DNA of 63,714 nucleotides, filler included, from Octopus bimaculoides (Eukaryota): NCBI RefSeq assembly GCF_001194135.2. It is 4 parts of 4 records of this genome, joined end to end, with 100 filler letters (N's around TTAATTAATTAA, not from the genome) between each part and the next. Parts side by side here need not be neighbours in the genome. Positions count along the whole stretch, not along the records: positions 1 to 27,531 come from NC_069007.1; 3 more parts are not named here. One strand, written 5' to 3'. The notes under the pieces are model-generated. The model was not told where the DNA came from. It saw nothing but the letters and a program-made list of their open reading frames with translations, and ran no database searches. Within the stretch, counting starts at the first letter, position 1. Each line of letters starts with the position of its first letter. Shown here one piece after another: positions 11,304 to 27,269 of the stretch. Position numbers and translations under genes: made by a program.

Positions 11304-11419
11304 TCAGGTGCATATGCCGTAGAAAGCTTTTAGATAAAGAAGTTGTCTGGTATGAATAAAATCTCCACACTTCTCTTCGTAATCAACGTCATTAAATACT
11401 CTTTGGAATATTTGCGTTT
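11304..11419 (-). CDS. Repeat-domain gene, probable terminal exon: (E)TQIFQRVFNDVDYEEKCGDFIHTRQLLYLKAFYGICT*
   Basis: ctcctattcag acceptor. The phase-1 start fits the preceding exon; 37 open codons then TGA. Confidence 0.6.
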
Positions 11420-12359
11420 CTGAATAGGAGCACGGAATTACCCAACGAGTGACGATTACCATTCATATATGCATACATATATATAGATATATATATAGGT
11501 AAATGATAGGATTGCTTCAATATTTCAGGGGTAGTCTGAAGTATATAAGCAACCAGATATATANNNNNNNNNNNNNNNNNNNNNNNNNNNNNNNNNNNNN
11601 NNNNNNNNNNNNNNNNNNNNNNNNNNNNNNNNNNNNNNNNNNNNNNNNNNNNNNNNNNNNNNNNNNNNNNNNNNNNNNNNNNNNNNNNNNNNNNNNNNNN
11701 NNNNNNNNNNNNNNNNNNNNNNNNNNNNNNNNNNNNNNNNNNNNNNNNNNNNNNNNNNNNNNNNNNNNNNNNNNNNNNNNNNNNNNNNNNNNNNNNNNNN
11801 NNNNNNNNNNNNNNNNNNNNNNNNNNNNNNNNNNNNNNNNNNNNNNNNNNNNNNNNNNNNNNNNNNNNNNNNNNNNNNNNNNNNNNNNNNNNNNNNNNNN
11901 NNNNNNNNNNNNNNNNNNNNNNNNNNNNNNNNNNNNNNNNNNNNNNNNNNNNNNNNNNNNNNNNNNNNNNNNNNNNNNNNNNNNNNNNNNNNNNNNNNNN
12001 NNNNNNNNNNNNNNNNNNNNNNNNNNNNNNNNNNNNNNNNNNNNNNNNNNNNCATTGAACGTTTTTAGAAAATAAAAAAAAATTGACACGTGTTATTTTA
12101 TTTTTGTCTCGTTGTGGTAAATATTTTTTCTAACTGTATTTGCTTGACAAAAACATACATTTGTTTTTATATTAAGCAATTCATTATAATTACTTTTACG
12201 ATGTGCCTAAATAAAAACCATCGTTATAGATCAGCATTTCTCAACCTTTTTCGTGATTTGGCTTCCCTTGGACATTGAAAAAATTTATTTCGGCTCCCCT
12301 GTGTTGATGAAAAATTTAATCCAGCTTCCCATGTATCTGAGATAGACTGGCCGGCCCAT

Positions 12360-13027
12360 GACAAACCTGACAAAAGTGGGCCGCAGAACTACCAGCTCAC
12401 GAACTACATCTGAAAGTTGGCGCGCCAATCATGCTGCTAAAGAATTTAGATGTGCAATGGTACGCGGATGATTATCAAAAAATTGTGCTCCCGAGTTCTG
12501 TAGGCAACAATCTTGAATGAACCGGCCGGCCGCTGGCTAAGGCATACTTATAACTCCCATGTCCCTTACCCACTCCGATACGACCTACAAGTTTAAACAG
12601 ATGCAATTTCCCATCAAACTCTGCCTTCCCATGACAATCAACAAGGCGCAGGGATAATGAGTGCAAGCGGTCGGTTTGAATCTGACAGAGCAAGTATTCT
12701 CACACGCACAACTGTACGTTGGCTGTCCCCATGGTCTTTCTATTTGTGCACCCGAAGGAAGGACGAAGACTGTTGTCTACCAAGAGGCACTCCAATGATA
12801 ACAACGGCAACTTCAACTGCTCCAATTTCAACTCCGCAATTTTTTTCATCGTCCTGCCAGCCCACGTAAGTCCAATCTTGCTTTGCTCACCATGACATTC
12901 TTTTTTTTTTTTCTACCAAGCTCCGTCGCCCTAACACCAGTTCGTATCCACTTCTTCCTCTTTTTTATGTCTTCGTTTCTCTCTTCACGTCGTTCTCTGA
13001 CCGGGTGAAACTGGGCTTAGCTTCTAG
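12360..13027 (+). mobile_element. Helitron remnant (PIF1-type helicase C-terminus plus 3' end)
   Basis: Frameshifted LPAHELHLKVGAPIMLLKNLD, QFPIKLCLPMTINKAQG and VFSHAQLYV motifs; short GC hairpin followed by CTAG at 13024-13027. Confidence 0.85.
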
Positions 13028-13969
13028 TATATACATAAATTAATATATATATATATTAAAATATATATTAAAGGAAATAAAGAAATACAATTGACATATT
13101 ATGAATTTATTAACATTATAATATAATTATATTATAAAAAGATACACACATAACAAAAGGTAACAGAAAAGATTATTTTGTTTGAAATATTTATTTTTAG
13201 AAGCAAATTAATGTCATTTGATGCATTTAAACACAAAACCTAATAATTAGCCGGCATGATGCCTTGTGCAGTTTTTTGATTATTTAAACCATTGGGGTTT
13301 CATATTAATGAACAGTGTCCAGGCAGATAAAACAATGTAACAAGGTTTTTTTTATTTTTATTTTGGAGATGTTTGCGTATGCGCATACGCACATATATAT
13401 CCTTATATCTTAAGATGTAAAATTAATGAAGCAAATGTCATTTATCATAGACCGTCGGATGTTCCTAAACCAGTTGTTAAGTATCCCACCATAGATGCTA
13501 AATGGGTCGAAACAATTGTAGTGATTAATAAATGTTCTCGTATCTTCCATCTTTCTCATTAACCTATATATATATATACAGTCATACACACACACACACA
13601 CACATATATATATGTATGTATGTATGTATGCGTATATATCCTTATATCTTAAGACTTTATATAACCTTCATATATTTTTCATAATTTTTGTATGTTTTAT
13701 TAATATTTTGACAGTTTAAAATTTTTTTTTGTCATATATCCAACTATGTACAGTGAACCTAAAATTATAAAAGTATTATATTTTTTATATATTTTATATG
13801 GTTTATATTTTCGTGCCTTCATATTTTTCTATATTTTTTTTATATTTGTATTTGGTCATATTTTATTTTTATATTTTTTTATTTCTTTATATTAAAAAAA
13901 AAAATTATAGCATAAAAATCTGGTGGCAATTTGTAATTTTAAATTTTTTTTTCATAAAATTCGTTATGA

Positions 13970-14125
13970 GTGGCTGTTTGGTAAGTAGCTTGCTTACCAA
14001 CCACATGGTTTCGGGTTCAGTCCCACTGCGTGGCACCTTGAGCAAATGTCTTCTACTGTAGCCTCGGGCCAGCCAAAGCCTTGTGAGTGGATTTGGTAGA
14101 CGGAAACTGAAAGAAGCCCGTCGTG
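13970..14125 (+). mobile_element. tRNA-derived SINE (representative of a family with many copies in the window)
   Basis: gtggctgtttggtaagtagcttgcttaccaaccacatggtttcgggttcagtcc head; related copies lie near 6060-6180, 35460-35520 and 51690-51850. Confidence 0.8.
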
Positions 14126-15287
14126 TGTGTGTGTGTGTTTGTCTGTGTTTGTCCCCTATCAGGTTTTATTAGCGTCTTGCCCCTTTAACTGGTAATTAAC
14201 ATCTTGATTCGGAGTCCTCCCCTACCTAGCCTCCTTTATAGACAATTACTTAGACATTTCCTAAAATCCTGACAATATTTATGACCATACCCAACTATAA
14301 TCTGTCAACTCAATCCTGCCATCCATTCTAAATAGACACTGTGCTCTAGCCTTAGATTTGGTAGTTGATAAAAAAGACTAATAAATTAAAAATGGACCAC
14401 AATCCTTTACAAGCTATGACTCTAACAATCTTCATACAGTTCTTAGAAGTGTAGTATATTCTTAACTACATTAGTAGAAACATGGACTCTTTCCCTCTTC
14501 TTGCTCTATTAAAGAATTTGAGTAAAATTATATTAAAGTGTCCAACTGATTAAAAATTCTATTTATTTATGCAACTGAGGATAGTCATGCATTTAAATTG
14601 ATGTGATAATTGCATTGTTAAATTAAATGGAGCCGCTTGAAACGGTCGTACTGCATCACCTCTTGATATCCTGTTTCTTATTTTGATTTTAGTCACCTCA
14701 CTTAGAGTTGTACGGATAATACTGCACTGACTTGGTGCTTCAACTTAATTACCTAATTCAACTGAATCTCAATTATTTCTATACGCACGCACACATATAC
14801 ATATATATGTAAGTATGTATGTATGTATATGTGTGTGTATAACTTTATATATNNNNNNNNNNNNNNNNNNNNNNNNNNNNNNNNNNNNNNNNNNNNNNNN
14901 NNNNNNNNNNNNNNNNNNNNNNNNNNNNNNNNNNNNNNNNNNNNNNNNNNNNNNNNNNNNNNNNNNNNNNNNNNNNNNNNNNNNNNNNNNNNNNNNNNNN
15001 NNNNNNNNNNNNNNNNNNNNNNNNNNNNNNNNNNNNNNNNNNNNNNNNNNNNNNNNNNNNNNNNNNNNNNNNNNNNNNNNNNNNNNNNNNNNNNNNNNNN
15101 NNNNNNNNNNNNNNNNNTATATATATATATATATATGGGTGAATGTGTTTGTGTGAGTCTATAAGAGTTCATTGGTATTGGTAACATTTATAGCTGCTCA
15201 CTGTTTCTGATCAAGCCATTTGCCAAACAAGTAAGAGTCCAGCATAAATCCATGCATTTATGGGAAGCTGTTTAGTGATTGTCATAC

Positions 15288-26047: not shown

Positions 26048-26428
26048 GTTGGCACTCCGTCGCTTACGACGACGAGGGTTCCAGTTGATCCGATCAACGG
26101 AACAGCCTGCTCGTGAAATTAACGTGCAAGTGGCTGAGCACTCCACAGACACATGTACCCTTAACGTAGTTCTCGGGGATATTCAGTGTGACACAGTGTG
26201 ACAAGGCTGACCCTTTGAATTACAGGCACAACAGAAACAGGAAGTAAGAGTGAGAGAAAGTTGTGGTGGAAGAGTACAGCAGGGTTCGCCACCATCCCCT
26301 GCCGGAGCCTCGTGGTGCTTTAGGTGTTTTCGCTCAATAAACACTCACAGCGCCCGGTCTGGGAATCGAAACCGCGATCCTATGACCGCGAGTCCGCTGC
26401 CCTAACCACTGGGCCATTGCGCCCCCAC
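26048..26428 (-). mobile_element. Full-length tRNA-derived SINE
   Basis: Same family as 22810-23188. Confidence 0.85.
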
Positions 26429-26471
26429 AATGGTTATAGAACAATGTTTAAAAGAAAACGAATTAGCTTAC

Positions 26472-26706
26472 CTGTTGGGTTGATGCTGATGTCATAGGAA
26501 GGATTGCTACAAGCTGAGGAACTGAGATCGAATCGTTTCTGGGAAAGGACATTGAGGACCAGCTTACGAAGGTTCGATACTTGATCAACAAATAATTTCC
26601 CTGGCTGATCGTCAGTTGCCGAAGTCTTGTAGTCGTAGTTGGCTTCATTAGGATAACTGTTTTGAAATGAAGCGTACACAGTGACCACACCACATTGGAC
26701 CTTCAC
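26472..26706 (-). CDS. Repeat-domain gene, exon b1: VKVQCGVVTVYASFQNSYPNEANYDYKTSATDDQPG...CSNPSYDISINPT
   Basis: ttctccag acceptor, G|gtaagc donor, 235 nt. Confidence 0.9.
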
Positions 26707-27144
26707 CTGGAGAAAATAACAGATATAATATACAGGGTGACCGCATCAAACTGGACACTGACCTGGAGATAACAAAAACGGTGTAACATGTACGGTGTCC
26801 CTGATTTGATCTGACTGATTCCTTTAGCGATGGTGTCCAAACTTTGTTCCATAAACCCACTGTCTCCTCCTATTATCTATTCTACCGTTACTACAACATT
26901 GTCTTCTCAGAACTAGCTATTTCCAGTCCTTTCTCCCCGCCAATGTGAACCCACTCTTCAGAATTCCCTCCATTGCCCACATTTATCTTGTAGTCATAAA
27001 TGTCCCAAAATCAATATTAAGAATGTGACCAACGAGTCCTGGAAGGACCAAGAGGTTTATGGGTACTGTCCCTTCTTTCCCAATCATCCACAAAAACAGA
27101 AAAACACAATTCAGTATATATTGTTCTTAGAATATTCGTCTTAC

Positions 27145-27269
27145 CAGAACTGTTGTACCCAAGGTGGACTTAGTCGTGTTGGTGATCTGCAGGACTTGTT
27201 GTTTTGTCTCGTTAGTTTTTGGAATGGCGATATTGAGTAGCGGAGTTTCTTTTTGAACAACGGTCGGAG
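27145..27269 (-). CDS. Repeat-domain gene, exon a1: PTVVQKETPLLNIAIPKTNETKQQVLQITNTTKSTLGTTVL
   Basis: tatttccag acceptor, CTG|gtaaga donor, 125 nt; needs an upstream exon ending in phase 1. Confidence 0.88.

What the first reader, a model, noticed from the sequence alone, without database searches (positions are those of the whole stretch)
11304..27269. Unidentified multi-exon gene built from four copies of a three-exon, Cys-containing domain
Twelve exons form four cassettes a(122/125)-b(235)-c(84) with intron phases 1-0-1-1. They splice into one open frame, followed by a 30-nt linker exon and a probable terminal exon, about 638 aa in total. Repeats 1/3 and 2/4 are closest, so an ancient domain doubling was followed by a tandem duplication of the pair (about 21330-27300 versus 15690-20470, with homologous introns). 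Shared motifs are EQVL.I.N.T, C..VTVY....N.YP.E....YKT.AT...PG, L.L..LS.K, C..PSY...I.P and Cx8Cx8C. Many NxS/T sequons suggest a secreted glycoprotein. The VTVY...P.E..YD pattern weakly recalls PPC-like beta-sandwich domains (inference). I do not recognise the family, and no signal-peptide exon was found.
Basis: partly seen in the sequence, partly recalled or inferred. Interest (0 to 1): 0.8.

Follow-up and report, generated by a model that had tools for sequence, protein, structure and literature searches.

The report
Octopus VWA protein's repeated beta-sandwich tail
The window holds the 3' half of an already catalogued but uncharacterised Octopus bimaculoides cell-surface or matrix gene; its tail is four tandem copies of a mollusc-only beta-sandwich domain that no domain library describes, and the public gene model contains only two of the four copies.

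Summary
On the minus strand, twelve exons with consensus AG/GTAAG splice sites form four a(125/122)-b(235)-c(84) cassettes and splice into one open frame.

The gene ends in a single exon at 15317-15211. This exon encodes TSRTCTSTASGMTITKQLPINAWIYAGLLLVWQMA*, a GPI-signal-like tail conserved in paralogues. The in-window product is therefore 624 aa, not 638.

The exons match UniProt A0A0L8HVA9 (O. bimaculoides "VWFA domain-containing protein") exactly. That protein's signal peptide, N-terminal helical domain and VWA domain lie beyond the window edge. The public model joins a1 directly to b3 and omits six intact exons.

The a+b unit has no Pfam or PDB sequence match. AlphaFold predicts an 8-strand beta-sandwich (pLDDT 84) with two invariant cysteines. 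Foldseek finds only weak jelly-roll, CBM, C-CPE and P-domain resemblances (TM ≤0.56).

A profile search of 1.84 billion proteins finds the domain only in molluscs. Outside octopods it is usually single (two copies in the Pinctada protein) and sits between a VWA domain and chitin-binding CBM14 domains. Most octopod paralogues seen here amplified it and swapped CBM14 for a hydrophobic tail.

This is an ordinary lineage-specific extracellular gene, with an undescribed domain and an incomplete annotation. Interest is modest.

The parts
27145..27269 (-). Exon a1 (125 nt). Encodes the first strands of repeat 1. Preceded by a phase-1 intron. The upstream VWA exon lies outside the window.
   Evidence: AG acceptor and GTAAGA donor. 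100% identical to A0A0L8HVA9 residues 360-400.
26472..26706 (-). Exon b1 (235 nt). Core of repeat 1, with both invariant cysteines. Absent from the public model.
25087..25170 (-). Exon c1 (84 nt). A 28-aa Cx8Cx8C linker of the 'EAAC..VNS.CTAKQLDSAC' type. A partial duplicate at 24975-25058 is probably an artefact of the 10-N gap.
24591..24712 (-). Exon a2 (122 nt). Absent from the public model.
23250..23484 (-). Exon b2 (235 nt). Absent from the public model.
21640..21723 (-). Exon c2 (84 nt). Linker of the 'LEVVCHRKQDERHC' type. Absent from the public model.
20319..20443 (-). Exon a3 (125 nt). About 90% identical to a1 at DNA level. Absent from the public model.
19314..19548 (-). Exon b3 (235 nt).
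   Evidence: Present in A0A0L8HVA9.
18123..18206 (-). Exon c3 (84 nt).
17776..17897 (-). Exon a4 (122 nt).
16903..17137 (-). Exon b4 (235 nt).
16007..16090 (-). Exon c4 (84 nt). Its third Cys is replaced by Ser.
15211..15317 (-). Terminal coding exon (107 nt including TGA). Encodes TSRTCTSTASGMTITKQLPINAWIYAGLLLVWQMA*: small residues, a spacer, then a 16-aa hydrophobic C-terminus, which looks like a GPI attachment signal.
   Evidence: It is the only copy in the window. The tail is conserved in P0001, P0005, P0009 and P0010.

Best explanation
The window carries the 3' half of one O. bimaculoides gene (UniProt A0A0L8HVA9). The full protein has a signal peptide, a roughly 155-aa all-helical N-terminal domain and a VWA domain with a DxSxS MIDAS motif, all encoded upstream of the window. 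In the window these are followed by four tandem modules and a short hydrophobic C-terminal peptide.

Each module is a roughly 120-aa, 8-strand beta-sandwich, with two invariant cysteines that probably form a disulfide. Each sandwich is followed by a 28-aa Cys-rich linker.

Proposed mechanism (inferred): the C-terminal peptide is exchanged for a GPI anchor. The glycosylated beta-sandwich modules then form a semi-rigid stalk, possibly with glycan-binding capacity, that holds the metal-dependent, ligand-binding VWA head above the cell surface or in a chitinous matrix.

Every a+b unit and every c exon is phase 1-1 symmetric. Cassettes can therefore be duplicated, lost or skipped without breaking the frame. 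This explains the 2-to-5-copy variation among octopod paralogues and the isoforms annotated in O. sinensis.

The domain is ancestral to molluscs, where it is usually single (two copies in the Pinctada protein) and lies between VWA and chitin-binding CBM14 domains. In most octopod paralogues seen here it was amplified and CBM14 was replaced by the anchor signal; a few octopus members (P0030, P0013, P0011) keep CBM14-type modules.
For: Shown by tools:
- Exon structure and a single open frame.
- Exact identity of a1 and of b3-through-tail to A0A0L8HVA9.
- VWA at residues 180-349 of that protein (E 2.6e-42) and the DSSGS motif.
- One terminal exon only, and no 5' or VWA exons inside the window.
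- The O. sinensis orthologous contig has the same a/b/c/terminal exon layout and is colinear with the window.
- Its RefSeq isoforms X1, X2 and X3 differ by whole a-b cassettes.
- dN/dS is 0.34 (repeats 1 vs 3) and 0.64 (repeats 2 vs 4).
- AlphaFold model of the unit: pLDDT 84.3, pTM 0.81, eight strands.
- The two cysteines are invariant across 15 mollusc sequences.
- The profile search gives 25 hits. All those whose source was looked up or already named are molluscs: Octopus, Argonauta, Sepia, Tegillarca, Pinctada, Littorina and Haliotis.
- Those proteins contain VWA and CBM14 domains.
- The tail peptide is conserved in paralogues, and an analogous SGA-spacer-hydrophobic end occurs in the Argonauta protein P0016.

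Inferred: GPI anchoring, the intradomain disulfide, and the stalk or glycan-binding role.
Against: - There is no transcript evidence here that all four cassettes are in one mRNA. The only public model for this locus uses two.
- A RefSeq model (P0005) joins the same VWA exon to a different set of cassettes.
- GPI anchoring rests on a sequence pattern only.
- No binding function is demonstrated. Fold matches to carbohydrate-binding modules are weak (E ≥0.01, TM ≤0.5).
- dN/dS of 0.64 for repeats 2 vs 4 suggests relaxed constraint.
Confidence: 0.7

Rival explanations
1. Only two cassettes are functional. The mature mRNA is the public model (a1 joined to b3, then c3-a4-b4-c4-tail). Exons b1, c1, a2, b2, c2 and a3 are constitutively skipped or are decaying duplicates.
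For: A0A0L8HVA9 has exactly this structure. The a|b intron is phase 0, so a1-b3 is in frame. dN/dS for repeats 2 vs 4 is 0.64. O. sinensis isoforms show cassette skipping.
Against: All six omitted exons keep open frames, consensus splice sites, both invariant cysteines and the conserved sequon. Exons a1 and a3 are about 90% identical, so a short-read transcript assembly or an aligner could collapse a1...a3 into the observed chimeric junction. Relatives with 3, 4 or more, and 5 units are annotated (P0001, P0003, P0016).
Confidence: 0.2
2. These are two tandem paralogous genes, each with two cassettes.
For: The duplicated block is a complete a-b-c-a-b-c pair.
Against: The 1.2-kb interval between c2 and a3 has no copy of the terminal exon, no signal-peptide, N-domain or VWA exon. 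The duplication ends at 15670, before the terminal exon. The O. sinensis RefSeq isoform X1 splices the counterpart of a1-b1 directly to the counterpart of a3.
Confidence: 0.05
3. The four-cassette layout is an assembly artefact, from haplotype or collapsed-repeat misassembly in a gapped draft scaffold.
For: There are five N gaps in the region. One of them (25059-25068) is flanked by an obvious 91-bp overlap duplicate.
Against: The two blocks differ by 2-33% at DNA level and 22-32% at protein level, which is far beyond allelic divergence. Copy B is closer to O. sinensis (85-89%) than to copy A.
Confidence: 0.05

Closest known systems
UniProt A0A0L8HVA9_OCTBM, 'VWFA domain-containing protein' (O. 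bimaculoides 2015 gene set)
   Same: It is the same locus. a1 and b3-c3-a4-b4-c4-tail are 100% identical.
   Different: The public model lacks b1, c1, a2, b2, c2 and a3, so it has 2 repeats rather than 4. No function or domain is assigned to the repeat region.
O. sinensis LOC115230178 (isoforms X1-X3) and the octopod paralogues LOC115228461, LOC115227258, LOC115230439, the Argonauta hians LOC115230178-like protein, and the RefSeq 'collagen alpha-1(XII) chain isoform X1' of O. bimaculoides
   Same: Same repeat unit, same a/b/c exon structure and same hydrophobic tail.
   Different: Copy number is 1 to 5. The c linkers are used in different orders. The 'collagen XII' name reflects VWA similarity only; no collagen repeats are present.
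Uncharacterised mollusc proteins with the architecture signal peptide, N-domain, VWA, this domain, then CBM14 (Sepia CAE1320622, Haliotis XP_067666686, Littorina XP_070201851, Pinctada KAK3106820, Tegillarca KAJ8316184, O. bimaculoides XP_014783160)
   Same: Homologous beta-sandwich (profile E 1e-8 to 1e-4 against 1.84e9 proteins), the same two cysteines, and the same C-x8-C linker after it.
   Different: They have one copy (two in Pinctada), followed by one to four chitin-binding peritrophin-A domains. They lack the hydrophobic tail.
Pif/BMSP shell-matrix protein family (VWA + CBM14 + laminin-G; PMC11291548)
   Same: Mollusc-specific extracellular proteins that combine VWA with chitin-binding domains.
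   Different: No laminin-G or aragonite-binding region is present. The N-terminal helical domain and the beta-sandwich described here are not part of the published Pif/BMSP architecture. The window gene has no CBM14. Membership was not established.
Jelly-roll binding modules: C-terminal claudin-binding domain of C. perfringens enterotoxin, bacterial CBMs (35/36/61), the Kex2 P-domain, and PPC-type domains
   Same: Eight-stranded beta-sandwich of similar size. These are the best Foldseek hits.
   Different: E ≥0.012, TM 0.39-0.56, sequence identity ≤14%. There is no Pfam hit to PPC or to any CBM.

Membership tests
Octopod VWA / beta-sandwich-repeat / hydrophobic-tail family (A0A0L8HVA9-like) | About 120-aa repeat with the motifs C[GA].VTVY...P.E..Y...AT...PG, L.LT.LS.K and C..PSY.V.I.P | tested here: met
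   All four window units align with 15 units from octopod relatives. C46, V49 and C107 are invariant.
Octopod VWA / beta-sandwich-repeat / hydrophobic-tail family (A0A0L8HVA9-like) | 28-aa Cys-rich linker exon after the repeat | tested here: met
   Four c exons of two alternating types. The same linkers occur in P0001, P0003, P0005 and P0008.
Octopod VWA / beta-sandwich-repeat / hydrophobic-tail family (A0A0L8HVA9-like) | C-terminal ...TKQL.INAWIYAGLLL.WQMA tail | tested here: met
   Encoded at 15317-15211. Conserved in P0001, P0005, P0009 and P0010.
Octopod VWA / beta-sandwich-repeat / hydrophobic-tail family (A0A0L8HVA9-like) | Signal peptide, N-terminal helical domain and VWA domain upstream | not testable with these tools
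   There are no such exons in the window. They are inferred from the 100% match of window exons to A0A0L8HVA9, which carries VWA at residues 180-349.
PPC / bacterial pre-peptidase C-terminal domain (PF04151) | Significant match to the Pfam profile | tested here: not met
   No PF04151 hit at E≤10 for the 589-aa product or for 15 diverse family members.
PPC / bacterial pre-peptidase C-terminal domain (PF04151) | PPC-like beta-sandwich fold | tested here: inconclusive
   A beta-sandwich is predicted. Only weak matches were found to related jelly rolls: C-CPE, the Kex2 P-domain and KP-43 (TM 0.38-0.47, E ≥0.02).
Pif/BMSP shell matrix proteins | Chitin-binding CBM14 domain(s) | tested here: not met
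   None in the window product. CBM14 is present only in distant relatives.
Pif/BMSP shell matrix proteins | Laminin-G or acidic mineral-binding region, and VWA clustering in the Pif/BMSP clade | not tested
   No LamG hit in any family member scanned. No VWA phylogeny was made.
GPI-anchored surface proteins | C-terminal signal: small omega-site residues, a 5-10 residue polar spacer, and a terminal hydrophobic stretch with no cytoplasmic residues | tested here: inconclusive
   STASG, then MTITKQLP, then INAWIYAGLLLVWQMA at the end. This is pattern inspection only; no dedicated predictor or experiment was used.
Carbohydrate-binding modules (jelly-roll CBMs) | Structural match with conserved ligand-binding residues | tested here: inconclusive
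   CBM35, CBM36, CBM61 and a porphyran-binding CBM appear among the hits at TM 0.28-0.43. Binding residues were not assessable.

The most novel reading that the evidence does not exclude
The roughly 120-aa two-cysteine beta-sandwich is a previously undescribed, mollusc-restricted glycan- or chitin-matrix-binding module. It was ancestrally paired with VWA and CBM14 domains. Octopods, which have lost the shell, would then have redeployed it as a multi-copy, GPI-tethered cell-surface adhesion array. Alternative splicing of phase-symmetric cassettes would tune its length or valency.
Probability: 0.2. Interest if true: 0.5.

Novelty: new variant of a known kind. Interest (0 to 1): 0.3.

Why it matters
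Three results are useful.

(1) Annotation. The public model of this gene omits six intact exons, which is half of the repeat region. A RefSeq model appears to fuse its VWA exon with a neighbouring paralogue.

(2) Domain cataloguing. The repeat and the N-terminal helical domain are confidently folded, conserved domains with no entry in Pfam or the PDB. The repeat is confined to molluscs. The N-terminal domain also occurs as a stand-alone protein in corals.

(3) Evolution. This is a clean example of phase-1-1 exon cassettes driving copy-number change. It also shows shell-less octopods replacing chitin-binding domains with a membrane-anchor signal in a VWA matrix-protein lineage.

None of this overturns current understanding. 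Lineage-specific extracellular repeat proteins are common in animal genomes.

Tried and rejected
- Pfam scans of the 589-aa product, of 15 diverse repeat units and of 11 N-terminal domains gave nothing meaningful.
- PDB sequence searches with three profiles gave nothing.
- Foldseek of the repeat gave only weak generic jelly-roll hits.
- Foldseek of the N-terminal domain gave no significant hit. The top hit was a GH23 lysozyme-like chitinase at E 1.8 and TM 0.4. My idea that the 'ES...GGIWQ' motif marks a lytic-transglycosylase or lysozyme-like fold is therefore not supported.
- Rfam on the whole piece gave no hits.
There is no homology to any family member there, and the conserved tail is at 15317-15211.
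- I first suspected that the ORF 'ECSATCTLISRAGCSVDRINW' was a Cys-rich exon. It is a dispersed SINE-like repeat found on both strands.
- Look-ups of the genomic contigs for P0002 and P0005 failed, so the upstream exons and the chromosome-level context could not be read.
Identical substrings of database proteins were used instead.
- Literature searches for the locus names and for octopus VWFA proteins found nothing specific to this family.

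
Full report
**Sequence and layout**

The piece (1-27531) has 38% GC and seven N runs. A six-frame scan shows the repeated peptide motifs on the minus strand.

A self-BLAST shows that 15670-20484 and 21301-27310 are tandem duplicates at 67-98% identity, introns included. 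It also shows a dispersed roughly 180-bp repeat on both strands (1988-2168, 15563-15668, 22804-22990, 26047-26229), which is not an exon.

**Exons**

Twelve minus-strand exons were delimited by their first and last bases:
- a1 27269-27145
- b1 26706-26472
- c1 25170-25087
- a2 24712-24591
- b2 23484-23250
- c2 21723-21640
- a3 20443-20319
- b3 19548-19314
- c3 18206-18123
- a4 17897-17776
- b4 17137-16903
- c4 16090-16007

Every acceptor is a pyrimidine tract followed by AG, and every donor is GTAAG. Joined, the exons give 1770 nt with one open frame of 589 codons; the other two frames are full of stops.

The a exons start with two bases of a split codon (phase 1) and end in phase 0. The b exons end in phase 1, and the c exons are 1-1. 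Each a+b unit and each c exon is therefore a symmetric 1-1 module.

**3' end**

The database relatives end in ...TSRTCTSTASGMTITKQLPINAWIYAGLLLVWQMA. This peptide is encoded contiguously at 15317-15211, behind a ttatatttttcag acceptor and in the frame left by c4.

The read-through version is the one conserved in O. sinensis, O. vulgaris and other O. bimaculoides proteins.

A tblastn search finds only this one copy of the tail in the window. It finds no signal-peptide, N-domain or VWA exon anywhere in the window. Nothing supports an exon near 11304. The in-window product is 624 aa.

**Assembly gaps**

No gap touches an exon. Two gaps lie 3' of the stop codon. One lies in the b3-c3 intron, and the paralogous stretch in the other copy holds only the SINE-like repeat. 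One lies inside a 32-bp tandem array in the a2-b2 intron.

The 10-N gap at 25059-25068 is flanked by a 91-bp duplicate with one mismatch. This produces a second, acceptor-less partial c1 and is best read as an unmerged contig overlap. It leaves one residue ambiguous (Pro or Ser in VNS[P/S]C).

**Identity of the gene**

A search of 5.8 billion proteins returned 11 hits, all from Octopus. UniProt A0A0L8HVA9 (O. bimaculoides 'VWFA domain-containing protein', 688 aa) contains a1 and b3-c3-a4-b4-c4-tail at 100% identity. The junction falls exactly at the a|b boundary.

So the window is O. bimaculoides, and the gene is already catalogued. Its upstream part lies beyond 27531. That part comprises:
- a signal peptide (MSIKYLLFVGICLGIARHVYA);
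- a roughly 155-aa N-terminal domain;
- a VWA domain at residues 180-349 (E 2.6e-42, with a DSSGS MIDAS motif).

The public model omits six intact exons (b1, c1, a2, b2, c2, a3). Because a1 and a3 are about 90% identical, that junction could be an alignment or assembly collapse, or it could be a real skipping isoform.

**One gene or two**

Between c2 and a3 there are only 1.2 kb, with no terminal or 5' exons.

The O. sinensis contig VCDQ01005497.1 (L001) carries a gene with the same exon types, in the order VWA, a-b, a-b-c1, a-b-c2, tail. It is colinear with window copy B at 85-89%. Its first a-b best matches window a1-b1.

RefSeq isoform X1 of that gene includes all units; X2 and X3 each drop one a-b cassette. 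Other relatives have four or more units (P0003) and five units (Argonauta P0016).

These facts favour one gene with optional cassettes. Without RNA data the four-cassette mRNA remains inferred.

**Selection**

Amino-acid identity is 78% (repeats 1 vs 3), 68% (2 vs 4) and 40-42% for the other pairs. dN/dS is 0.34 and 0.64 for the young pairs and 0.40-0.50 for the old ones. Constraint is therefore moderate, and looser on repeats 2 and 4.

**The repeat domain**

There is no Pfam match (15 diverse members) and no PDB sequence match.

AlphaFold2 was run on 17 octopod units, with the first row identical to window unit 4. It gives an eight-strand beta-sandwich with mean pLDDT 84.3 and pTM 0.81.

Foldseek against the PDB finds nothing with E below 0.01 or TM above 0.56. 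The leading hits are jelly rolls: the C-terminal domain of C. perfringens enterotoxin, CBM35/36/61, a glycosidase accessory domain, the Kex2 P-domain, the KP-43 C-domain and viral capsid proteins.

Membership of PPC or of any CBM family is not shown.

**Distribution**

An exhaustive HMM search of 1.84 billion representative proteins found only 25 hits. All those whose source was looked up or already named are molluscs: Octopus, Argonauta hians, Sepia pharaonis, Tegillarca granosa, Pinctada imbricata, Littorina saxatilis and Haliotis asinina. All are 'uncharacterized'.

Outside octopods the domain is usually single (two copies in Pinctada). It lies after the same N-domain and VWA, is followed by a VVC-x8-C linker homologous to the c2-type exon, and then by one to four CBM14 chitin-binding domains.

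The two cysteines are invariant across the phylum. I infer that they form a disulfide.

**Cysteines and sequons**

Each linker carries three Cys (c4 has two, plus one in the tail exon), giving 20 Cys in total. The odd third Cys could form inter-linker or intermolecular bonds; this is speculation.

There are 10 sequons, against 7.7 ± 2.5 expected. One, I[TS]N[TS]T, is conserved in every unit.

**C-terminus**

The sequence is STASG (small residues), then MTITKQLP (spacer), then INAWIYAGLLLVWQMA (16 hydrophobic residues) and the stop. This is the textbook shape of a GPI attachment signal rather than a transmembrane helix with a cytoplasmic tail. That comparison rests on my own knowledge and was not tested. 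The highly diverged Argonauta protein ends analogously...SGATSWFNPQYGIVVCLVNLILVLL.

**N-terminal domain (outside the window, followed for context)**

It is conserved across molluscs. It also occurs as stand-alone proteins of roughly 160-270 aa (typically about 190), including in corals (Orbicella, Montipora, Porites); 115 hits in total.

AlphaFold gives an all-helical model with pLDDT 91.5. No significant PDB fold match was found. The top hit, at E 1.8, is a GH23 lysozyme-like chitinase. This is a lead only.

**Literature**

The Pif/BMSP family (VWA + CBM14 + LamG) is the nearest described mollusc family (PMC11291548). That paper counts 111 VWA-domain proteins in O. bimaculoides.

No paper found names this locus or describes this domain. 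An octopus skin-mucus proteome lists unspecified 'VWFA domain-containing' proteins, but they cannot be linked to this gene.

**Verdict**

The finding is a real, correctly spliced gene segment. It belongs to an already catalogued but uncharacterised VWA protein. It contains an undescribed mollusc-specific beta-sandwich domain, amplified to four copies by cassette duplication. It probably ends in a GPI anchor signal. It is of modest general interest.

Noticed in passing
window 1988-2168 (+), 15563-15668 (+), 22804-22990 (-), 26047-26229 (-); also L001 6172-6351 and 6667-6848: A dispersed repeat of about 100-180 bp at 79-97% identity, SINE-like. It contains an open frame 'ECSATCTLISRAGCSVDRINW' that mimics a Cys-rich exon. 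It is present in introns of the gene and in O. sinensis.
   Followed up: partly
window 24968-25058 and 25069-25159: A 91-bp duplicate with one mismatch directly flanks a 10-N gap and duplicates most of exon c1. It is probably an unmerged contig overlap. The mismatch changes Pro to Ser in the linker.
   Followed up: yes
window 23538-24080: A 32-bp tandem repeat array (about 17 copies, 87% matches) in the a2-b2 intron, containing the 10-N gap at 23748-23757.
   Followed up: partly
window 12371-12517 (+): A short ORF matches the Pif1 helicase 2B domain (PF21530, E 6.6e-11). It is likely a Helitron or Pif1-like transposon remnant downstream of the gene.
   Followed up: partly
window 9878-10024 (+) and 16268-16911 (+): ORFs that look like transposable-element remnants: '...YLPDLVPVDFHLFPQ', which from memory resembles a mariner transposase C-terminus, and a 151-aa ORF in the b4-c4 intron. 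Neither has a Pfam hit.
   Followed up: partly
P0005 (RefSeq 'collagen alpha-1(XII) chain isoform X1', O. bimaculoides) residues 58-228: A 171-aa stretch is 100% identical to the VWA exon of A0A0L8HVA9. It is followed by a second VWA and by cassettes only about 80% identical to the window's. The RefSeq model may therefore fuse exons of neighbouring paralogues and skip the window's cassettes.
   Followed up: partly
A0A0L8HVA9 residues 22-178 (encoded upstream of the window): The N-terminal helical domain is a conserved, undescribed domain (pLDDT 91.5, no Pfam or PDB match). It also exists as stand-alone proteins of roughly 160-270 aa (typically about 190), including in corals. It has invariant GGIW and PLYSGL motifs.
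   Followed up: partly
P0011 and P0013 (O. vulgaris and related octopod paralogues): Some octopod paralogues still carry peritrophin-A-like chitin-binding modules after a single repeat. They are intermediates between the mollusc-wide architecture and the GPI-tailed multi-repeat form.
   Followed up: partly
window 32-162: A perfect 65-bp x 2 tandem duplication at the very start of the piece.
   Followed up: no
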